64,000 nucleotides of DNA, taken from assembly GCA_904063045.1 (NCBI GenBank), contig CAJFCJ010000001.1:1984001-2048000 (forward strand), read 5' to 3'. The notes beneath the pieces are model-generated. The model was not told the origin of the DNA. It saw only the letters and a program-made list of their open reading frames with translations, and did not search any database. Positions 9,944 through 64,000 of this stretch are shown here, piece by piece. How positions within the stretch are numbered: the stretch's first letter is position 1; each line of letters opens with the position of its first letter. The stretch is from Dimorphilus gyrociliatus. Taxonomy: Eukaryota > Animalia > Annelida. A program made the translations under genes and the position numbers.

Positions 9944-12464
9944 ATGACTATAGATGATGAGCAACCCAGATCGGATGGAGAAACGCAAGAAATGCAAGAA
10001 ACTGAAATGGAATCAGAAATAGGTACAGGTACGGCAACAGAAAATGGAAAAAAGCATTCTCCGTCACCTGAGGAAGCAAAAAAAGCTCTTACATCCAAAG
10101 AAGTAGATCAACAAGCTCAAGGCAAGTTTCCTTTAAATAGTAAAGTGATGAAAATTAATCCTATGACTATCATACTGTTGTTACATAGAAGGTGAAGAAA
10201 TGAATCTCTTGAAAACTAATGGTACGATGGTGGAAATGGATGAAGAAAAGGGAGAGAATGGAGCTGACAATAGTCGAATAAAGATAGTTACCAGCGAAAA
10301 AAAGAAAAAACAAAGAAAGTGTTTATTCATCGGAATCGTCGTAATATTAGTCATAATTACAGCTGCCCTAATTGGAATGCTGGCCCACCACTATACTACA
10401 ACATATAAGAAACTTCGTCTTGCAGTCCTATTCCAGGACAACATGGTTCTTCAACGAGAACCTCAGAGGGCAAGAATATGGGGCTATGGACCGTCGAGTC
10501 CAAAAAACCAGTCGATTTTCGTACAGTTAAAGAACAAAACAGGTCACATTGTTCAAAGCCAAACAACACAAACGGTTAAGACTGGTAACGAATATATTTG
10601 GTCTATATATTTGGAACCGATGAACAAAGGTGGACCATACATGATTGAAGTTCAATTGGAAGGTTTCAAAGAGGAGGTTTTAAAAATAAAAAATATTCTC
10701 TTTGGTGACGTTTGGATATGTGCTGGCGACGAAAATATGCAGTACACGCTACATAAGGTACGTAGGGAATTGGAACGCATTACAATTTTGTGTGCAATAA
10801 TGTTTATTATCGACAGATGGGAAATGAATACGATGTTTTAATGTTAGCTAAACGGGCCTTACATTTACGGTTATTTTCTCTGTCTTCACTAAGATCTCGT
10901 GTACCACTCTCTGACATAAGAGATGTTGAAATACCCTGGTCATTACCAACAAAAGGTACTATCCACGTCTTGAGACTAGACAATATAATTATTTGTTTTC
11001 CGTACATTAACTTTTAGATGCATTATTTGGACAAGAACCGCTACCAGGCCAAATTGGATCACATTTTAGCTCTTTGTGCTTTAACTTTGGTAGGAAACTG
11101 TATCATGAATTAAACGTCCCAATTGGACTCATTTCATCAACGTTCGCCCATTCTAAAATCGAAGAGTGGAGTAGTACTGACTCAGCTAAAGAGTGTAATG
11201 AAGATTCTTTCAGGTTTGTATAAAAGTAGATTTTATTGGAATTTTACAAAACACAAACCTTGTATAACGCCTGCATTTAACATTTATAGAAACAGCCACA
11301 CTAGTACCGTCTGGAATTCCATGATTAATCCACTGAAGATGCAAACCTTCAAAGGAATGATCTTTTATCAAGGTAAAGTACTAATGCTATAAATCACCCT
11401 ATTCGCTTAGATTCATGACCTTTATTGCTTCCAGGAAGCAAAGATGCAATAGAAAGCACTTATGGACCAACATACGAATGTCTTTTCAAACAATTTATTA
11501 CATCCGTTAAATCGGAGACAGATGCTTCTGTTGGCTTCATTCAAGTATGTTACCCGTAAAATTTGCTTCTTGACCCTTCATTAATCAATTATTACACAGC
11601 TTCCTGGGGCAGCTAATAAATATTTATACCACTACACTAATATTAGATGGCTACAGACGTCATCTTTCGGTTACGTTCCAAATAAACTCATGTCAGATAG
11701 TTTTATGGTTTCAGCTATTGACTTGCCAGCGTATAAACAATCAAATCCCAGGTAAAATAAATAAACAGTTAATGTAATTCAGCAATCTCTCATTAAAGTA
11801 CTTCTTTCTCAACAGTTTTTTTGTCAATACAACGGACGTGCTGAGTGATAGATTAGTGTTGTCTGTACTCTATCATTCGTATCAATGGCAAAACGGAGCA
11901 AACTTGACTCCATATCCTATTGATATTCAGACCATTGGGAAGAATCTTCAAATAACTTTTCAATCGAACTATGAAAGTAACCCAGAAAGCATTGACGCGT
12001 TTGAGGTATTAATTATGCTTATTTGTCAGCTATATATCACACTTAAAACAATGTTTTGCAGATATGTTGCACTCCAAAGAATTTCACAGATCCTTGCCCT
12101 GAGTTTGGAAAAACTGGAGAAACCACGGGCGGATTTGTAAAATGGTTACCCGCACTTCTAGTCGAATCTCAAGCTCCATTCTTAAAATTGGGTGTTGATA
12201 GAGATTCCTGTTCACTGTAAGTACTTGAATATTTTTCTCTGCCTCCTATAATTGAAGTTTTTCTCTCTCCTTAGTGATAAGAAACTACACGGTATCCGAT
12301 ACGCGTGGAATGCCCAACCTTGCGATTTTGAAAAATGCGCTATCTACGGTGAATCTAACAAACTACCTACTGGACCTTTTTTGTATCCGAATCTAGATGA
12401 AAACCAGATAAGGAAAAGAATAATTATTAATCGCTTGTTTTCAAACTCAACAAAAGGAGTTTAA
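9944..12464 (+). CDS. Sialate O-acetylesterase (SIAE)-like SGNH-fold protein with N-terminal cytosolic region and one TM helix; catalytic motifs degenerate
   Basis: SIAE-family motifs LFQDNMVLQRE..RARIWGYG, ILFGDVWIC, FGRKLYHELNVPIGLI, IFYQG, GIRYAWNAQPC..CAIY..LPTGPF across about 9 exons. TM segment CLFIGIVVILVIITAALIGMLA. Confidence 0.85.
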
Positions 12465-53428: not shown

Positions 53429-54851
<1,423 letters not shown>

Positions 54852-55061
54852 TATTTAAAAAAATACAAATTTTTCTTCAATAATAATTCGCTTCAATATG
54901 GCGTCTATGGCAAAATTGTCCGAAATCAAAACAGCATTCCACTTTCAACTTGGAGAAAACTGGTAAAAGATTACACATTTTAAACAAGCCATTGTTCAAC
55001 TTTTCATTTTGACGACACTACTCTTTGTCACACGAATCTACATCAATTGAATTTTATAGAA
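54852..55061. promoter_or_regulatory. Bidirectional promoter between KAT8 and MYCBPAP exon A
   Basis: Divergent ATGs at 54851 (-) and 55062 (+), 210 bp apart; YY1-like AATATGGCG near 54896. Confidence 0.45.
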
Positions 55062-55119
55062 ATGAGTTCTCGTCACGGAACTAAAACAAAAGCCGAGAAA
55101 GGGAGACCTAAATCATCTG
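55062..55119 (+). other. MYCBPAP candidate first exon A (MSSRHGTKTKAEKGRPKSS)
   Basis: ATG 55062; 58 nt (19 codons + 1); donor G|GTGAGC; phase 1 fits acceptor TTAG|AT at 61119/61120. Confidence 0.75.
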
Positions 55120-58100
55120 GTGAGCGGTTTATTAAATATTTTTGAGCGATTTTACAGGGTTTTGATGCAAGTTTAAAATTTTTAATCGTCTGGAATCTTC
55201 TCAACCAAGCGATAAGACATAAAGAACAAAGATAATGTATCTTAGTGCCAAATATGAGTTTGTAAATTATTTAATTGCCCCATAAAATCCATAATATTTT
55301 CCAATAGATGGGGCCTTTTTTAATATTTGTTTACATTGGCAACTATGGATTAAAGAAAAGATTATTGACTAAACTACTAAAGTCTGTTTGATTAGCGCTT
55401 AGATAATGGTAACTGCACGGCCTAACTATGAAGCACCTAGGTTATACGTAAATTTGATTTCTAACGCAAATATTGAATCGAGGAAATAAATTAATTTTTA
55501 ATATTTTAAAGCTTCAATTAAACAGCATATCAAATAAATATAACAAATAGTCTCCTAAATTTCGAAACATGAGCTACACTTTTTAAAAGAAAAGATAAGA
55601 TCTCAAAAACTAATAACTAAATTCTTTAACACTATTTCTTTTATCAATAATTACTGAAAATTTTAATAAAATTAACAGTATTATATCTATCGATTGAATG
55701 CTCATTTCTTTTTTGATAAATTCTGAACAAATTATCAATTAAATTGAAATTTTTAGAAAAATACTAGATATGCGCCTAATGTCTTGTATAACCATCCTTT
55801 CGTTGTCATGCGAACATGAATTATTAGACTATAGATGGCGGCACAGTGCTGAGTTCTTCTTTCATGGTAATTTACTTCGGATGAATATTTACATTTGAAT
55901 ACTTATGTACATAAGTTATCTTTTTTAATTTAATTATTTGAGTACAAAGTGACATACCGTTCAATTAATCTGTTAATTACAATTTTTTTGAAATTATTCT
56001 CTATAGAAACTAAAATTTATGAATAATATTTGAATCGTACCTTTATGAAATTAAAGATGAGCGTCTTTTGATAATTATCCTTTTCATGGGGAAAATTCTT
56101 TTACATTTTAGTCAATGTCACTCGACTAATTCTATCAAGAGAGTTTAAGTGAAACTAGAGGGAAAGAGACTCCTTTTTCAATGATCGATAGGAATGCAAT
56201 TGAACAGAGAGGTTTCGACAAAAACTCGTTTTCTTTTAGTTTGCCATTCCTGTTTCCATTAGCTTACTCACTGTTAATGGCTGGCGTATCTTTTATTAAT
56301 GCAACATACACTATTACTATTTGCTTCACAAAAAGATCCTGAAGCTGTTCAATTCAGACATTCACTTTTTATAACCAAACAGAGTAAATTGTCAGGTCAA
56401 AATAGATGTTGTATATAAAATAAGACAATATACAAGCTACATCCAAAAAATTGGATAGCTATACTACTTTGTGATAAACTTTTCAAGTTACCTGTGTAGA
56501 GTTTCGTCAAATTTTTGACAAAGGCTAACTTTAAAATATTGGTTAATCAATAAAGCTAAGGTAGCAGCTTGTTAAATCGTTTTTAAATGGCTATATTATA
56601 ATTATTGACTGGTAACGAAAGAATATTTTTCACCTCTGAGCAACTATCCGAGAGCGTTGATTAATACATCTACGCTATCGGATTGTAAAATGCTCTTGGA
56701 TTTAAGAAAAAGTGCTCGAAAGGCGGCTTTCATTAGTAAGTTTTTCTATTAATATTCGTTTAATATCCGTTATAGCACTCTTTATTGCTATTAAACACAT
56801 TCAATCTAAAGCAATAGTCAACAGTTAGGGTAATTTTCACGCCTTTCATCTGTAATTTTATCACCGACTCGCTTATTTAGATCACTCAGAAAACTTTATG
56901 CTAACGTTTAAGTGAAATCAAGAAAATAAGCATTTAAGTTAGACTTAATTAAACTGTCTAATACTTCTCTTGTAGTGGAGTAAAGAGTTTGGTATTGATT
57001 TTTACTATCGTTTCGTAAATTTAATCCGTAATTAGAAATTATTTTCTCACTCCTTTTTCAACAACTACAATCTCAGTAAAATTTGTGAAAGAAGGAATAT
57101 TATAGAAGTTATGCAGCATTTACAGATTCCAAATAGGGAATTTGGTGGTTCACCATCTATAAATAGACGAAAAGCAAGTGGAGGCTCAAGTTTAAGAACT
57201 CCCGAATCAATTAAAAGCAGGAGTGAACGGAAGTATTCAACCGTTCGTGAGTTTATAAGATTTTTTTGCCTATTAATTTCTTCAATTTCGCTTAACAATT
57301 TTATAAGGTAACAAACTAAGCATATCATTTTTTTCATGTTGATTAATATCTTATCAAGTACTTTCATGCGTTTATCCTATTCTTTCGAAAGTTTTTCCGA
57401 GGCTTAAATGTGAAATAATTGATATTATCATACTAAATTATTCAATGGAGTTTTAGGTGTAGAAAAGCATTAATCAATAGAAGCGATTTGTTTAAATAAT
57501 GAATATTTTTAGAGACGAAAACTGTTAAAATTACACCAATCTTTCTAGATTTACAGTCTTTTATAGAGATACTAAAAATGAGCTATTCTATATAATTTAG
57601 TATACAGCATATACAGTATATATGTATATACTGTATATATATATATATACTGCAACAATTGCAATAAACATTTTTCAGCTCAATGAAAGATAATCAAAGG
57701 CAATGCCATATTGTTTCATCAATTTAAATTCATTTAACATTTATATAACTAAAAAACAACATTTTAATACCCCTTAAATCATAAACGTGATAGAAGAATT
57801 GAGATCGCGACTTTACCTGATCGTATTGTTTTCCTAATCGTAAATCAATGCTTGAACAACGAAGACCCTTATTCGTTTATCGAAAATCTCATTGCATTTT
57901 CGCATCAATATCCTTTTTTATTATTTTATTATGTTATTCGGTACCTCAGAAAAGAGATAGCTACAGAACGTGAGAGATAGACGAACAAGTTATACATATC
58001 AGTATATGTATATATAAATATATTGTCAGCTGTATAATTAACTTAAGCTTCTTCTTCGCTATACCGTTAAGATGATCAGAACAAGAAAGAGGAGTAACAC

Positions 58101-60473
58101 TCAAGCTCCTAAATCACAAGAATCGGTATTGGATTTAAATTCATCTTCTGGATCAGCGATAGATGGCGGAAGAAGTAGTAAATACGCAAACCGATATGGT
58201 CGAATCCGAGGCAATTTAACTACTTTAAACGCTTTTAGTAGGTTATTCATTTGTATAAAAATGTTGTGAATCAATAGGTCTTTAGTAGAATTCAAAAGAA
58301 ATTTATAAGAAAAGTACCTAAATTGCTATCATTATATAATAAAAAGTCAAGGAATAGTATATATTGCGAGAACGCAGCATTTTCATTTTATCTAATCACT
58401 TTTATAGTTTTAAATATTGAAGTAAAACAGTAATATATCTTAAATTTAATACATTTATATAGTAATATTGTACATTATTTTTTAATAGTACTTTTAAAGG
58501 AATGTTTATAGAAAAAAAGATAACTCATACCTTTTAATTTAAATACAACGTAAATATTCTATACTTTCAGTTGAAATTCATGATATTCAATGATAAGAAA
58601 AATAATATATGGGAATTGTTTAATATTTACAAAAGAGGTCACTTATTGTACAGTTGTCTCTAGTTTAAATTTGCAATTGATTCGTATCATGTTAATTCTT
58701 TGATCCTAACTTATTATTTGCTCTCGTTTTGGAAATCAATCCTAACTGATATAGTATACACTTACTGAATAATTATAAATGAATTTTATCCTCTCATTTT
58801 ATAATCCTCTCACTTACACGTTCGGTGATAAAATCATATAAAAAATATATGATATTCATACCGCTTCAAGTTTTAATTAATCAAATTTGATTTTTTGAAA
58901 ATATTCTTTTGGTTCCGTGTGCGAAGAGTTTAAATTAAAAACTGAATTCAAGTAGACAAAATTATTGTGGGAGTATAACAGGAAATTCTCCTATGAGACC
59001 GCGAAGAATTGTTCAAATAGTATAAATTCAGCCCTGAGGATATAAGTCGCCCATTAGGGGATAATGAACCAATATAGCGCAAAGAAGAGTTAAAGAAAGC
59101 ACGTTTTCAAATTGGTCGTGTTTGTTTTCTCCTGTAAATATTTGTTTGAGATTTGTATAGTTAAAGAACGTTCAAGTAGTTGGACTCTGATCTTCTATCT
59201 TGCCGGTAATATGTCTAGGAGTTCAACTGCATCAGGCGGTCGGAAATGGACGGCTTTAAAAAGAAAGACAATGGTTACTTCCGCCTTAGGCAGTAAGTTT
59301 CTTAGAGATTTTATTTGTATTTATTTTTTGTAAGGTCTTTCGATAAGTTTTGAAAAAGCAGGCATACTAAAAAACTATTAATTTCTACGATAATGGTAAT
59401 ATAGAGAACGTAACTTAAAGGATTGGCAATATTAATAGATTATTCATTATTCTTTTATCAAAGATTATTCAGCGAAAGATAAAAATATTATATTATTAAA
59501 GAATATTCGAAAGAAAGAACATTTTTTAAAAAACACAACAATGAATATTTATTACTTTTTACCAAGTATAAAACTTATATTTACCCAATTGAACTTTTAA
59601 ACTTTCCCTTTTAAAACTTTGAGGAAAGTAAGAATTAATTATTACTTTTATTGCTTTTAATCCGTTAAAAAAATATTATAAATGATAAAAAGCGCCCTCT
59701 TTCTACTAAAAAAATAAAAAATGTTAGTTTTTATTAGAATGCGGCGCCATCTAGGATATATGGGTTATTTTATGTATAACAAAGAATATTTTAATAATTT
59801 AATTAAGATAACACGATAACAGTAATTTAACTACCAGCTTTATTATGATTATTACTATTATCATTCTTTTTATGTTATTTCACAAGACTATATTTGTTAG
59901 AAATTTTTGTCGGTTATACATAAGCACTTATACAGTATTATAAATGAAATAAGGAAGCTCATCAACTAGTAATACCTTCTCAAGATAATCTTATCAAATA
60001 TTCAAATTTATCAAGAATTTTAATATCGGAATACATTTCTTTACTTTTGTTGAAAATCGACAACAACAACAATGAATAGTCGACGCGGTTCGATCGACGC
60101 TGTTCATGGACGATCGAGTAGTAAAATATTAGAGCGAATACGTCTACATACCGATTCATCTAGATCAGATTCGGATATGCAGAGAAAATCTTCAAGAGTA
60201 TCATTTGATACTAGAAAATCTTCAATATTATCAGGTTTTTTGTCTTAGTTATCTATAATAATACCTCGTCTCCTACCGTGTATACACTGGTAACAAAAGA
60301 CGAACAAGAAATGAAGAAAGAACGTTTTCTTATTTGTCCAAATATCTCTTTGGCACTAGATAAACATATATTAATCGGTTTTTTTTTGTAATACAAGCGT
60401 CTTGTGGTTGAACGGTAAGCACTTTGTAACAACAAATGAACATAATATAAGGAACAGCTAAATAATATATATT

Positions 60474-60533
<60 letters not shown>

Positions 60534-63500
60534 TATGCATATACATACCATATTTTATCATTCCTTTAAGATCTATTTGAGAAATTCTCGGATCAATTTG
60601 TTAAAGTAAAGTAAACTAATCAACGTGTAACATTCCTTCTGACTTGTTTCAGCAAAGCGATTAGATAATGGCGCCTCTAGCGATTGTAGCAATTTACTGA
60701 ACTTGATTCTGTCTTGAAACTTCAGTCGGGAATTTTTAAATAAATCATAGTTGTGCAAATAGCCGCGTGGGATTAACTAAATTTGTATCAAACGCCTTTT
60801 GTTGGCTGAATGTCGATTATTATCTTTAGATCTTTCATTGCGTTAGCATATCATATCTGAAATAATACTGTTAATTCCTTTTCTTCTACTTTCTCTTTGA
60901 TACGTGCGTCAAAATTGTTCCCCTTGGATTTATGCAGAAAGAACACGTATCGGCGTTGGCAAACAGGAGGAGGAGTGTTCAAATAAGAAGAGGAAGTGTT
61001 TTAATTCCACACGGTTCTCTTGTTCCAAAGAAACATTTTTTAGACTATTTTAAGAATAATAATATTTAAATGTGTATATCTTCCTAAGCTTGTGCTAATC
61101 AAAAAATTGTGTATTTTAGATAAGCTAAGGAAAAAGCCGGGAACTCCTGATAAAACTACTACACCTGGAACGGAAGCTAATGCCGAAGAGGAAAAGAAAG
61201 TTATTGTGAATGAAGAAATACTTCGTCTTGCAATAAAACACGAAGATCTCGTTAAGTTGAGGAAGGAAGAGAAGACTCCTGAGCCCACTCAACCACTCAG
61301 AGAAATATCAATAAGAAGGGAGCGTCCTGAAAAAGAATGGAAGAAACCACCTTCTAAGAGGTAATATTGAAGTTATAAGACTGTTAGCTTTATCACTGAT
61401 CTTTCTGTAATTGAACAGAATTGCTGTTGCTAAGGAGGCACCGAATGACGCTCCCCTTCGTCCTTATAATTTAAAAGGTTTTTTCTTTCATCTTATTATT
61501 GTATATTATTTATTCTTTAAATTATTTCCTTCTCTTCATATTTTTAATTAATAATTTATCGTGTCCTTTAACATATACATTAGACGGCGCCGGCCCTAGA
61601 TTTGATCATTTTGGGAGAATAGTGCCCCATAGTATTCTTGGAGATGCGTATACGTATCAAAGGAATGCAATTGAAACTGGCCAATGGCCTAATGGGGCTG
61701 TAATTGAATATCCAGTACAAGAAATGAAAGTTAAGAATGAGAAGAAAAGGGAGAGAAAGATAGCTTTTGAGGAAGAGGAACATAAAGCCCTAGAAAATTG
61801 GGAGAAAAAAATGAGAGAAAGGAGAAGGCAACAAGGATATTTATCTAGTAAGTTTCTTTCATAGATTAAAGGTTTTTATTTGTTTGAGAACGTGCCATAT
61901 TTGAAGTATTTCATATAGATTTCCTCAATAATCGCATTTTCATATATTTTATAATTATCTACTAGATTCGTTTAATTTACTTCATTAAATGAAAAGAATA
62001 AGAAATCAATAACTTTATTATGTATCATTGGGTATTAATTTAGAGATTAAAAACAATAAAATTAACACATCGCCATTGGCTATTAATAGTAATAATTAAT
62101 ATCCTCTAAAGGGAACAAAGAATCGATGCTTAAATATTCATAATTTTCATTCTATTTGGTTATAATGCACAAAATAGTAAATTCCTCCTGCTATAAATGC
62201 TGATTTACATTAAAACCGCTTTTTTTTTTACTGGTTATAATTCAAACAACTTTATTTCTCTGCGAAATATTTATACGTGATTTATCACAAATTAAGTAGT
62301 ATCAAACAAAGACTTATGCATTTCAAAGTTTTTTTCAAGTTATTTTACTCTGCTTTTATCATTACTTTAAAATAAACAGTAGCCCTATATTTATAATAAA
62401 TAGATATTTCTTTTTATCAATAATTATTAACTCTTTTAAAGAGTTTCTATCATGTAATTATTATAAGAATTATTGTCTTTTAGAATTACTTAACAAGAAA
62501 CCGGAAAATCTAGTAATGAATCAAGCTGATGGATATAAAAAGACCCAAGAACGTAGGGATATTATTGATAAAGCTCTTCCTCTTGTTGAAGATGGAAAAG
62601 GATGTACGTCTATAGAGAAAATTAAGTTCAGACTTTTTAATAAAATAAAGAATTTATTTTTATTTAGATCGTTATAAAAGCGAATTTTGGAATCAACACG
62701 AATGGTTTGGTGGAGAGGAGACGGGAATATTGTAAGAAAAAGATACAATTCATACTACGTCTATATCCAAGTTAAATTTTTTTTAGTGCCGCCTTATCGG
62801 AATCCCAAAAAGGAAATCACCAGCCGATAGAAAAGGTTGGAGTTCCTCGTACTGTAATGAGAGAGAAGGGTATAGATCCTCTACTACCGCCTTCAACTCC
62901 TAGTTCAAAACCTTGGCATCAAACTCAATATTTGAAAAAACGTCAAGAACAGTTGGCGGAACTAGTTCGAGAAATCGATCCATATGATCCGGTATATTTC
63001 TTTTTTTTTTTATACAATTTTTCATTCATAAACTCGTTTTAATTCTGTGCAATTAGCAATTTCAAACTTTGGAAGTAATTGGCTCTAATAAGCCGGTTGA
63101 GATCGATAGACTAGAACTGAAAAGTAGGGAAACAACTTTTACTAGATCCGAAAACCAAATGGGCGATATAGGCGATATTTTGACCGAGTCTGTATTCAAA
63201 TTCATAATAAATTGTTTATTTTACAGTTATTATACTGTAAATATCTGCTTTATAGCGATCCTCTAGCGGGAATACCAGATATCCCAGCACCTGTTCAAGG
63301 ACCTTCTATCGTTATAGAAGGTAAACAGTTAGACTGGGAGGGAGATAGTCACTCAAAGTCTGATGAGACTGCATTAGTGGCAAGAGTTGTCTTTGAATGT
63401 ATTTCTGGAGAGAGGAAAACGGAAATGTTCCAAGTAAAAAACAATGGATCAACAGCTATTTACTACAATTGGAACGTAAGTTTAGCAAATAACTCAGCTG

Positions 63501-64000
63501 TTTTCTATCAATATGCAAAAAGTATTAATTTATATTTTTAATTATAAAGAAAATTGAAAAATCAAATCCATTTGATCAAGTTAATCGGAAGATTCAAAGA
63601 TTTTATTTTAATACAAATGGAGGTAACCTATATTTTCTACAAAATAGTAAACTATAATTCAAATATATCTATGAATTTCAGGAGTTATTTTGCCAGGAGA
63701 TACCAAAAGATTCCCTATCGTATTTAAATCTAGCAATTACGGTATCTTCTCAGAGACTTGGCAGTTTCATACCCATCCTGTTGTGGCGTCAGGAGCAAGT
63801 ATTTTTGTAACTTTGAAAGGAGTCGCCCTTCAGGTTGACAAGTATGAAAAAGAGAGAAAGGACTTAGAGATTATGCTTACGCACAAAGAAGCTGAAGAAA
63901 CTGTTGGAATGATTTTAGAGAGTATTTTAAATGGAGTTAGAACACCAGAGAGGCCAGCGACGCCTATAGACGCGTACTTGACTGAAGCAGAGGAGTTTAA
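55062..64000 (+). CDS. MYCBPAP: MYCBP-associated protein (MYCBPAP/AMAP-1-like, ciliary/flagellar), runs off right edge; multiple candidate first exons splice to common exon at 61120
   Basis: Common exons give DGAGPRFDHFGRIVPHSILG; HKALENWEKKMRERRRQQGYLS; RDIIDKALP; SEFWNQ; LEVIG; VQGPSIVIEG; NNGSTAIYYNW; RFYFNTNGGVILPGDTKRFPIVFKSSNYGIFSETWQFHTHP; VTLKGVALQ. These match recalled MYCBPAP blocks. Confidence 0.85.
56690..56735 (+). other. MYCBPAP candidate first exon B (MLLDLRKSARKAAFI)
   Basis: ATG 56690; 46 nt (15 codons + 1); consensus donor A|GTAAGT; phase 1. Confidence 0.55.
57111..57246 (+). other. MYCBPAP candidate first exon C (MQHLQIPNREFGGSPSINRRKASGGSSLRTPESIKSRSERKYSTV)
   Basis: ATG 57111; 136 nt (45 codons + 1); donor C|GTGAGT; phase 1; locally GC-richer than flanks. 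Confidence 0.7.
58072..58237 (+). other. MYCBPAP candidate first exon D (MIRTRKRSNTQAPKSQESVLDLNSSSGSAIDGGRSSKYANRYGRIRGNLTTLNAF)
   Basis: ATG 58072; 166 nt (55 codons + 1); donor A|GTAGGT; phase 1. Confidence 0.65.
59211..59292 (+). other. MYCBPAP candidate first exon E (MSRSSTASGGRKWTALKRKTMVTSALG)
   Basis: ATG 59211; 82 nt (27 codons + 1); consensus donor A|GTAAGT; phase 1. Confidence 0.7.
60072..60234 (+). other. MYCBPAP candidate first exon F (MNSRRGSIDAVHGRSSSKILERIRLHTDSSRSDSDMQRKSSRVSFDTRKSSILS)
   Basis: ATG 60072; 163 nt (54 codons + 1); donor CAG|GTTTTT. The same AG|GTTTTT donor type is used by an internal MYCBPAP exon near 61478. Phase 1. Confidence 0.65.
60476..60530. repeat. 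(TA)n microsatellite
   Basis: About 27 uninterrupted TA units. Confidence 0.95.
60932..61013 (+). other. MYCBPAP candidate first exon G (MQKEHVSALANRRRSVQIRRGSVLIPH)
   Basis: ATG 60932; 82 nt (27 codons + 1); weak donor G|GTTCTC; phase 1; would leave a 106-nt intron to 61120. The CAG at 60935-60937 could also act as an acceptor. Confidence 0.5.

What the first reader, a model, noticed from the sequence alone, without database searches (positions are those of the whole stretch)
55062..61120. Array of at least 7 mutually exclusive coding first exons feeding one MYCBPAP body
Seen: in a genome of ~55-nt introns, the gap between exon A and the common exon is 6,000 nt. It is punctuated by GC-richer islands, each beginning with ATG and ending at a phase-1 donor: 55062-55119 GTGAGC, 56690-56735 GTAAGT, 57111-57246 GTGAGT, 58072-58237 GTAGGT, 59211-59292 GTAAGT, 60072-60234 GTTTTT, 60932-61013 GTTCTC. 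Every exon length is 3n+1, and all fit the single acceptor TTAG|AT at 61119/61120. Each frame closes soon after its donor if unspliced. The peptides are not copies of each other. Inference: a variable-exon/constant-region architecture, like clustered protocadherins or UGT1A, driven by promoter choice and producing many N-terminal isoforms of a ciliary protein. I know of no such array reported for MYCBPAP.
Basis: partly seen in the sequence, partly recalled or inferred. Interest (0 to 1): 0.92.

Follow-up and report, generated by a model that had tools for sequence, protein, structure and literature searches.

The report
Seven alternative first exons of MYCBPAP
A cilia gene (MYCBPAP) in this small-intron animal genome has seven conserved alternative protein-coding first exons that give different, kinase-site-rich N-termini; the same layout already sits unremarked in database gene models of brachiopods, molluscs, ribbon worms and sea urchins.

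Summary
All seven islands start with ATG, are 3n+1 long, are followed by GT, and fit the single acceptor at 61119/61120. The downstream body is a MYCBPAP gene (Pfam PF14646).

Spliced contigs of one public RNA run join exons A, D and E to 61120, and A appears to be the major form. No F or G junction was seen.

A diverged relative's genome keeps all seven exons at identical lengths, with ATGs and no indels. Pooled pN/pS is 0.13, while the flanks are almost unalignable. So all seven are real coding exons.

Exon A is the ancestral N-terminus. RefSeq isoforms of brachiopod, molluscs, nemertean and sea urchin show 3-7 N-termini joined at the same phase-1 codon. In the Lingula genome, four such exons lie in tandem upstream of the common exon.

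The likeness to protocadherin/UGT1A is topological only. The exons are not paralogues, share no upstream motif, and D is also spliced into an extended E exon.

B-G carry 10 conserved [RK][RK]x[ST] sites, against 2 expected. This is a new member of a known kind, of moderate interest. The scan also noted these phosphosites separately (s1-083267).

The parts
55062..55119 (+). First exon A, the ancestral and apparently major N-terminus (MSSRHGTKTKAEKGRPKSS, plus 1 nt)
   Evidence: The loose end before 61119 in an X2 contig equals 55089-55118. It is 17/19 aa identical in the relative. It is homologous to the 19-aa MSSKL..K.DRP+SS exon of amphioxus, coral, molluscs, Lingula, Lineus and urchin (z about 6).
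56690..56735 (+). First exon B (MLLDLRKSARKAAFI)
   Evidence: 14/15 aa are kept in the relative, 8 of 10 differences are at third positions, and the GTAAGT donor is kept. A conserved block lies at 56537-56612, 80-150 nt upstream.
57111..57246 (+). First exon C (45 aa, with RKAS and RKYS sites)
   Evidence: 39/45 aa are kept, pN is 0.06 and pS 0.59, and the GTGAGT donor is kept. There is no RNA test.
58072..58237 (+). First exon D (55 aa, with an RKRS site)
   Evidence: An RNA joint links 58237 to 61120 with GT..AG at depth 21. A second joint links 58237 to 58571. 43/55 aa are kept, pN 0.13 and pS 0.63. A conserved block lies at 57792-57894 upstream.
59211..59292 (+). First exon E (27 aa, with RKWT and KRKT sites)
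   Evidence: An RNA joint links 59292 to 61120 at depth 49. 27/27 aa are kept despite 10 synonymous changes. In the relative the donor reads ATAGGT, with a phase-1 GT 15 nt further on.
60072..60234 (+). First exon F (54 aa, with RRGS and two RKSS sites)
   Evidence: 46/54 aa are kept, pN 0.08 and pS 0.44, and CAG|GT is kept. The same GTTTTT donor type is RNA-confirmed at body intron 61478. No F junction appeared in X2.
60932..61013 (+). First exon G (27 aa, with RRRS and RRGS sites)
   Evidence: 25/27 aa are kept, pN 0.05 and pS 0.52, and ACG|GT is kept. An X2 contig ends exactly at 61013, but no joint is listed. A conserved block lies at 60746-60883 upstream.
61120..61360 (+). First common exon, with one shared phase-1 acceptor (tttag|AT) that encodes x-KLRKKPGTPDK...
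   Evidence: Joints from D and E and the exon A loose end all land here. The main body contig starts here. The AG|ATAA acceptor is kept in the relative. The junction is the same as in other phyla.
61419..64000 (+). MYCBPAP body exons: 61419-61477, 61584-61847, 62484-62603, 62668-62731, 62787-62991, 63057-63187, 63256-63475, 63550-63622, and 63682 onward. The gene runs off the window.
   Evidence: All introns are seen as GT..AG joints in X2, and several also in X1. Pfam PF14646 matches down to 3e-31.
58571..59292 (+). Extended E exon, used as an internal exon after D in some transcripts
   Evidence: X2 contig 4 carries 30 nt of the D end, then 58571-59292, then 29 nt of the common exon. Reading from the D ATG stops 7 codons after the joint. 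The acceptor region is not alignable in the relative.
59014..59190 (+). Conserved non-coding block just upstream of E: candidate promoter or 5'UTR, with TATA-like GGATATAAG and CCAAT
   Evidence: It is 93% identical over 177 nt without gaps, which is more than the coding exons. It is transcribed in X2.
60746..60883 (+). Conserved non-coding block upstream of G: candidate promoter
   Evidence: 91% identical over 138 nt without gaps.
56537..56612 (+). Conserved non-coding block upstream of B: candidate promoter
   Evidence: 91% identical over 76 nt.
57792..57894 (+). Conserved non-coding block upstream of D: candidate promoter
   Evidence: 83% identical over 103 nt.
55314..55388 (+). Conserved intronic block with TGTTTAC and TTGGCAAC. 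From memory these resemble forkhead and RFX half-sites. It is a candidate ciliary enhancer.
   Evidence: 84% identity, with the core 55327-55360 nearly identical. The motif assignment was not tested.
59254..59584 (-). Intron of an antisense transcript that overlaps E to G
   Evidence: A CT..AC joint links 59253 and 59585 in the X2 contig that runs unspliced over 59585-61013. Its splice sites are not conserved in the relative.

Best explanation
The 6-kb first intron of this MYCBPAP gene holds six further first exons, B to G. With exon A they form a tandem array of seven alternative, ATG-initiated coding first exons. Each ends in phase 1 and is spliced to the single acceptor at 61120. The products share one MYCBPAP body, a central-apparatus C2a protein of motile cilia, and differ in an N-terminal peptide of 15-55 residues. 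Exon A lies next to the divergent upstream gene, is the ancestral N-terminus, and appears to be the major form in the one run available. Exons B to G are most likely driven by their own internal promoters, marked by the conserved blocks upstream of B, D, E and G. Their basic, Ser-rich tails carry conserved [RK][RK]x[ST] sites, so they probably place different basophilic-kinase (PKA-type) inputs on the protein in different ciliated cell types or stages. The array is ancient: the same junction and layout occur in brachiopod, mollusc, nemertean and sea-urchin genes.

What is shown: the exon structure, coding constraint on all seven exons, splicing of A, D and E to 61120, and the cross-phylum layout. 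What is inferred: use of B, C, F and G, one promoter per exon, and the kinase function.
For: Structure. Gene identity.

RNA. X2 contigs give GT..AG joints 58237->61120 and 59292->61120. A loose end at 61119 equals exon A at 55089-55118. The body contig begins at 61120, as expected at a branch point. X2 depth is 0 in the 636-nt body intron but 10-49 over 58000-61013, so the array is transcribed in its own right.

Selection. Against the relative's contig L001, all seven exons have the same length, the same ATG and no indels. Differences by codon position are 31/15/91. Pooled pN/pS is 0.13, while flanks are 37-57% identical. GT is kept at 6 of 7 donors and the acceptor is kept.

Candidate promoters: conserved blocks upstream of B, D, E and G.

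Deep conservation. Exon A matches the 19-aa first exon of other phyla. RefSeq isoforms show 3-7 N-termini per species, all joined at x|K[LQF]K with x = D/N/H. In Lingula, four such exons lie in tandem over 11.8 kb upstream of the common exon, each running from ATG to a phase-1 GT.

Kinase motif: 10 [RK][RK]x[ST] sites in B-G against 2.1 +/- 1.4 in shuffles (0 of 2000 shuffles reached 10), and all are kept in the relative.
Against: No junction read exists for B or C because they were untested. None was found for F or G in the single RNA run. There the F-G stretch is covered by an unspliced contig that carries a minus-strand-type intron, so it is probably antisense RNA.

There are no TSS data, so promoter choice is not demonstrated. 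The D donor is also spliced to 58571, so D and E are not strictly exclusive at the RNA level.

The E donor GT is not kept in the relative. The F and G donors are far from consensus, although the GTTTTT type is used elsewhere in the gene.

Only one relative and one informative RNA run were available. Contig depths are a poor measure of isoform ratios.
Confidence: 0.8

Rival explanations
1. Only A, D and E are MYCBPAP first exons. B, C, F and G are conserved for another reason: stand-alone small ORFs (micropeptides), or exons of other transcripts such as the antisense RNA.
For: No junction was seen for F or G in X2, and B and C are untested. An antisense, spliced RNA covers F and G. The unspliced ORFs would give peptides of 20-66 aa.
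Against: All four end at a conserved GT exactly in phase 1. Conservation drops right after the donor; in C, for example, 39/45 aa are kept before it and about 10/20 after it. Their composition and RRxS motifs match D and E, and match the alternative N-termini of other phyla. Substitutions follow the plus-strand codon phase.
Confidence: 0.08
2. There is one promoter at A, or only a few promoters. The islands are selected by splicing rather than by their own promoters, as internal or 5'UTR exons of long transcripts.
For: The D donor is spliced to an acceptor at 58571, and the resulting exon contains E. In the clam Mercenaria, some RefSeq forms place a cassette between the A-type exon and the common exon.
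Against: A phase-1 exon of length 3n+1 spliced after another phase-1 exon breaks the frame; D followed by the extended E exon stops after 7 codons. No conserved acceptor precedes any island: the AG before the D ATG and the 58571 acceptor are both absent in the relative. Each island keeps its own ATG. Strongly conserved blocks sit just upstream of B, D, E and G.
Confidence: 0.08
3. This is a protocadherin-like choice system, in which insulator-type sites and antisense transcription select one first exon per cell.
For: TAGATGGCG, which from memory resembles the invertebrate CTCF core and also YY1, is enriched in the window: 25 matches at up to 1 mismatch against 6 expected. Sites at 55832(+), 59745(-), 59693(-) and 60668(-) are kept in the relative inside otherwise unalignable DNA. 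An antisense RNA crosses E to G.
Against: The sites have no fixed position relative to the exons. No motif is shared upstream of the exons. The exons are not paralogues. The antisense splice sites are not conserved. The factor that binds the motif is unknown, and there are no single-cell data.
Confidence: 0.07
4. The islands are chance ORFs in an AT-rich intron.
Against: Identical lengths, the third-position bias and pN/pS of 0.13 in a relative with pS of about 0.57. RNA junctions for D and E. The other ORFs in the gap are hydrophobic, and the one inspected (56181-56342) is frame-broken in the relative.
Confidence: 0.01

Closest known systems
RefSeq/GenBank MYCBPAP isoform sets of other invertebrates: Lingula anatina, Magallana gigas, Crassostrea virginica, Mytilus edulis, Pecten maximus, Mizuhopecten yessoensis, Mercenaria mercenaria, Haliotis rufescens, Patella vulgata, Lineus longissimus, Strongylocentrotus purpuratus
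   Same: They show 3-7 distinct N-termini per species in the sampled models. All are joined at the same split codon (D/N/H) before K[LQF]K..TP[ED]K. One of them is the 19-aa A-type exon, and many others carry RRxS sites. In Lingula the four exons lie in tandem with the A-type most distal, each running from ATG to a phase-1 GT.
   Different: Those are automatic gene models. I found no paper that describes the array. Only exon A aligns significantly across phyla; B-G give z of 2-5 only. Here the array is packed into 6 kb of a compact genome, and all seven exons are backed by selection in a relative.
UGT1A and clustered protocadherin variable-exon / constant-exon loci (from established knowledge)
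   Same: A tandem series of first exons, each spliced to the first common exon, gives proteins with variable N-terminal parts and a constant remainder.
   Different: In those loci the variable exons are large paralogous copies encoding a whole domain or ectodomain. Protocadherin promoters also share a conserved element. Here the exons are short (15-55 aa), unrelated to each other and share no upstream motif. Stochastic choice is untested.
Drosophila hydra, a testis-expressed gene with nine alternative first exons (PMC1904467; title and abstract only)
   Same: Many alternative first exons in one gene.
   Different: hydra is described as a recently evolved gene. This array is ancient and sits in a conserved ciliary gene.
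Vertebrate MYCBPAP, a C2a projection protein of the ciliary central apparatus that binds MYCBP (PMC13345628)
   Same: The same protein family (PF14646), with an N-terminus homologous to exon A plus the common exon.
   Different: That paper does not mention isoforms, N-terminal variants, PKA or phosphorylation. Whether vertebrates keep any of the array was not tested here.

Membership tests
MYCBPAP gene (Pfam PF14646) | Match to the family profile above the curated cut-off | tested here: met
   Exon translations score 26-109 bits against a cut-off of 24.5, with the best E-value 3e-31. 359 homologues were found in the representative search.
MYCBPAP gene (Pfam PF14646) | Canonical N-terminal exon (MSxxLxxKxxKxRPxSS) followed by KLxxxxGTP[DE]K | tested here: met
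   Exon A plus the common exon reads MSSRHGTKTKAEKGRPKSS|DKLRKKPGTPDK. It aligns to scallop, clam and Lineus with z of 5.6-6.5.
Gene with alternative coding first exons | Two or more ATG-initiated first exons joined to one common acceptor in transcripts | tested here: met
   A, D and E are joined to 61120 in X2 contigs.
Gene with alternative coding first exons | Every listed exon is joined to the common acceptor | tested here: inconclusive
   F and G show no joint in the one RNA run. Phase-1 donors and coding constraint are conserved for all four.
Gene with alternative coding first exons | The exons are translated, as shown by purifying selection in frame | tested here: met
   Pooled pN/pS is 0.13, no indels, and 91 of 137 differences are at third positions.
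Gene with alternative coding first exons | A separate transcription start for each first exon | not testable with these tools
   No CAGE or 5'-end data are available. The indirect evidence is the conserved blocks upstream of B, D, E and G, and array coverage in X2 alongside zero coverage of a body intron.
Protocadherin/UGT1A-type variable-exon cluster | Variable exons are tandem paralogues encoding the same domain | tested here: not met
   There are no direct repeats among the exons. Pairwise peptide z-scores are below 2 except B-D at 3.5.
Protocadherin/UGT1A-type variable-exon cluster | A shared conserved promoter element upstream of each variable exon | tested here: not met
   No 8-mer is shared by more than 3 of the 7 upstream regions, fewer than in random sets. 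The TAGATGGCG sites are not positioned consistently.
Protocadherin/UGT1A-type variable-exon cluster | Each variable exon is spliced directly to the first constant exon, with one per transcript | tested here: inconclusive
   This holds for A, D and E. However, D is also spliced to 58571, giving an exon that contains E.
Basophilic-kinase (PKA-type) substrate region | Enrichment and conservation of [RK][RK]x[ST] | tested here: met
   10 sites in 229 aa against 2.1 +/- 1.4 in shuffles. All are kept in the relative, and they recur in other phyla.
Basophilic-kinase (PKA-type) substrate region | Actual phosphorylation by PKA | not testable with these tools
   This needs phosphoproteomics or an in vitro kinase assay.

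The most novel reading that the evidence does not exclude
The alternative N-termini form a bilaterian-wide regulatory module. Each ciliated cell type, or sperm, would install a MYCBPAP isoform with its own set of PKA-type phosphosites on the C2a projection. There it sits next to MYCBP, a protein known from the literature to bind AKAPs, so cAMP or other second messengers could tune ciliary beating differently in each cell type. Vertebrates may have lost most of the array.
Probability: 0.3. Interest if true: 0.75.

Novelty: new member of a known kind. Interest (0 to 1): 0.55.

Why it matters
[quoted passage not shown] MYCBPAP is an essential C2a component that binds MYCBP (PMC13345628). If the array works as proposed, an ancient, selectable set of N-terminal tails rich in basophilic-kinase sites gives a concrete, testable handle on cell-type-specific control of ciliary beating in invertebrates.

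For annotation, the result shows that all seven short exons in this compact genome are real. It also shows that the many 'isoform X' models in other phyla reflect one conserved gene architecture rather than noise.

Tried and rejected
B and C therefore have no RNA test, and runs X3-X6 were never laid.

Two metagenome scans found no further relatives. One used the 105-aa exon and one used a 27-nt invariant core of the block upstream of E.

The look-ups of P0022 and P0061 gave no third species with usable flanks. L007 is the same species as L001, and L005 is only 1.7 kb.

Rfam found nothing in 54000-62500 except sub-threshold mir-297 hits on the TA repeat.

Orthology of B-G to particular mollusc or urchin N-termini was not significant, with z of 2-5. 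Resemblances seen by eye, such as the D tail RIRGNLTTLNAF|N against oyster LRGSVHTLQVLSRL|N, are only leads.

I rejected additional hidden first exons, coding potential in ORF 56181-56342 (a 1-nt gap in the relative), and trans-spliced leaders as the source of the loose ends (the foreign parts are 148 nt or longer).

The best named body homologue is from the annelid Owenia.


Full report
**1. The observation**

The seven islands are A 55062-55119, B 56690-56735, C 57111-57246, D 58072-58237, E 59211-59292, F 60072-60234 and G 60932-61013.

- Each begins with ATG.
- The lengths are 58, 46, 136, 166, 82, 163 and 82 nt, all 3n+1.
- Each is followed by GT.
- Each frame closes 12-63 nt downstream if read through.
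- Joined to the acceptor tttag|AT at 61119/61120, each opens into x-KLRKKPGTPDK...

The islands are GC-richer (0.37-0.46) than the DNA between them, which is about 0.20-0.30. The downstream exons match Pfam PF14646 (MYCBPAP), with the best E-value 3e-31. Body introns measure 55-106 nt plus one of 636 nt, so a 6,000-nt first intron stands out.

**2. Transcript evidence**

Only two runs were offered in the first search. X2 is RNA in practice: its contigs splice out all nine body introns at GT..AG. In X2:

- The D donor is joined to 61120 (58237->61120, depth 21).
- The E donor is joined to 61120 (59292->61120, depth 49).
- A contig ending at 61119 carries 30 foreign letters that are exactly exon A at 55089-55118.
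- The main body contig (depth 866) starts at 61120, as expected where several upstream paths converge.

A therefore appears to be the major form, with D and E minor, although contig depth is a rough measure. X2 depth is zero inside the 636-nt body intron but 10-49 over 58000-61013. The array is thus transcribed in its own right and is not seen merely as pre-mRNA or DNA carry-over.

There are three complications.

- The D donor is also joined to an acceptor at 58571. The resulting 722-nt exon runs through E to its donor. Read from the D ATG, this form stops after 7 more codons.
- The stretch 59585-61013, which holds F and G, is covered by one unspliced contig joined to 59253 across a CT..AC gap. 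That is a minus-strand intron, so this coverage is probably antisense RNA. The contig ends exactly at the G donor, but no F or G junction is listed.
- B and C lay outside the stretch laid.

**3. Comparative evidence**

A search with the unspliced C ORF found one 69-aa homologue. It lies on a 30.5-kb Logan contig of another organism, L001, with the same neighbours on both sides: a pyruvate carboxylase, a MYST acetyltransferase on the other strand, and MYCBPAP downstream.

Alignable parts are about 70-88% identical, and most of the interval is barely alignable. Against that background:

- All seven exons have exactly the same length in L001, keep the ATG and have no indel.
- Differences by codon position are 31, 15 and 91.
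- Amino-acid identity is 17/19, 14/15, 39/45, 43/55, 27/27, 46/54 and 25/27.
- Pooled pN is 0.074 and pS is 0.567, a ratio of 0.13.

The donor GT is kept at six exons and the acceptor is kept. At E the relative reads ATAGGT in two independent runs, with a phase-1 GT 15 nt further on. A scan for further conserved ATG-to-phase-1-donor segments found nothing convincing, so the array has seven members here.

The F donor GTTTTT is not a weakness in this genome. The RNA-confirmed body donor at 61478 is aag|GTTTTT.

**4. Regulatory anatomy (inferred)**

Blocks of 83-93% identity, more conserved than the coding exons, lie just upstream of four exons:

- B: 56537-56612.
- D: 57792-57894.
- E: 59014-59190, with TATA-like and CCAAT-like strings.
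- G: 60746-60883.

Other conserved blocks lie at 55314-55388, 56736-56878 and 58648-57757 is not one of them; the third is 58648-58757. I read the four upstream blocks as promoters or 5'UTRs of the internal first exons, but there are no TSS data.

No island has a conserved acceptor in front of it. A 3n+1 exon cannot be inserted after another phase-1 exon without breaking the frame. Together these points argue for first-exon rather than cassette use.

**5. What it resembles and what it is not**

The exons are not copies of each other. There are no direct repeats, and peptide z-scores are below 2 except B-D at 3.5. No 8-mer is shared by more than 3 of the 7 upstream regions, fewer than in random sets.

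The protocadherin/UGT1A comparison therefore holds for topology only: tandem first exons feeding one constant body. The defining features of those clusters, paralogous variable exons and a shared promoter element, were tested and are not met.

**6. The array is ancient and already present in databases**

Full-length homologues show that exon A is the ancestral N-terminus. Amphioxus, coral, molluscs, Lingula, Lineus and sea urchin all start with a 19-aa exon MS.KL..K..K.RP+SS, followed by D-KL....

RefSeq and GenBank models hold 3-7 different N-termini per species among the members listed, in oysters, mussel, scallops, hard clam, abalone, limpet, Lingula, Lineus and sea urchin. All are joined at the same split codon, D, N or H depending on the last base of the first exon, exactly as here. 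Many carry RRxS-type sites.

I checked one genome directly. In Lingula anatina the four N-termini are single exons in tandem at 10001, 14896, 16141 and 18876 of locus L008. Each runs from ATG to a phase-1 GT, and the common exon lies at about 21820. The A-type exon is the most distal, as in the window.

I found no paper describing this in the held library. MYCBPAP papers deal with its role in the C2a projection, and one recent study does not mention isoforms, PKA or phosphorylation.

**7. Likely function**

B-G are basic and Ser-rich (R 14%, S 18%). They hold 10 [RK][RK]x[ST] sites against 2.1 +/- 1.4 in within-exon shuffles; none of 2000 shuffles reached 10. All ten sites are kept in the relative. 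This agrees with the scan's separate note s1-083267.

MYCBPAP binds MYCBP in the C2a projection (PMC13345628). From general knowledge, MYCBP/FAP174 is an AKAP-binding protein. The most economical reading is that alternative promoters give different ciliated cells, or sperm, MYCBPAP isoforms with different kinase inputs. This step is inference.

**8. Verdict**

Promoter choice, strict exclusivity and the protocadherin analogy are not established.

This is a new, well-supported member of a known kind: a multi-promoter gene with alternative coding first exons. The added, apparently unpublished point is that the architecture is conserved across bilaterian phyla in a central-apparatus gene.

Noticed in passing
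window 7999, 8896, 55832, 58160 (+), 59745 (-); near-matches at 55305 and 59693(-); related imperfect site near 60668(-): TAGATGGCG is enriched in the window: 25 matches at up to 1 mismatch against 6.0 expected, and no shuffle reached 25. Three of the five exact copies lie in the array. Sites 55832, 59745, 59693 and 60668 are kept in the relative inside otherwise unalignable DNA. Plus-strand sites lie in the 5' half and minus-strand sites in the 3' half. From memory the motif resembles the invertebrate CTCF core and YY1. The binding factor was not tested.
   Followed up: partly
window 55327-55360: A nearly invariant intronic block, TTTGTTTACATTGGCAACTATGGATTAAAGAAAAG. From memory it combines a forkhead-like TGTTTAC with an RFX half-site-like GGCAAC, as expected for a motile-cilia gene enhancer.
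   Followed up: no
window 59253-61013, minus strand: An antisense, spliced RNA (CT..AC gap 59254-59584) covers exons E to G in run X2. Its splice sites are not conserved in the relative.
   Followed up: partly
window 58006, 58394, 59536, 59865: X2 contigs break here into 148-255 nt of sequence found nowhere in the window. Only 59865 has a splice-like dinucleotide, a minus-strand acceptor. These may be chimeric contigs, strain differences or distant exons.
   Followed up: partly
window 55394-55409 and 60656-60671: The 16-nt string AGCGNTTAGATAATGG occurs twice, just after A and just before G. Both copies are conserved in the relative.
   Followed up: no
window 59014-59190 and 60746-60883: These non-coding blocks are more conserved (93% and 91%, no gaps) than the coding exons beside them. 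The first is transcribed and contains a conserved 8-codon uORF-like segment at 59064-59088.
   Followed up: partly
L001 12351-12366 (the relative's exon E donor): The relative has ATAGGT where the window has GTAAGT, confirmed in a second run (L003). A phase-1 AAG|GTTCAT lies 15 nt downstream and would add 5 residues.
   Followed up: yes
window about 54500-54860, minus strand: The upstream neighbour is a MYST-type histone acetyltransferase, by its orthologue in L001 (Tudor-knot, zf-MYST, MOZ_SAS). Its start lies about 200 nt from the exon A ATG, so A probably uses a bidirectional promoter.
   Followed up: no
window 62501-63999 (run X1): A marine metatranscriptome holds correctly spliced MYCBPAP body contigs 90-99% identical to the window. 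A close relative therefore lives in that sample. Its contigs do not reach the first exons.
   Followed up: no
window 60440-60550 and 57608-57658: These are long TA microsatellites. The first gives sub-threshold mir-297 Rfam hits on both strands (artefact). The second tripped the read laying filter.
   Followed up: yes
P0381, P0382 (Mercenaria mercenaria isoforms X12, X10): In the clam, some models insert a short cassette between the A-type first exon and the common exon. The locus can therefore also hold phase-1/phase-1 internal exons in other species.
   Followed up: no
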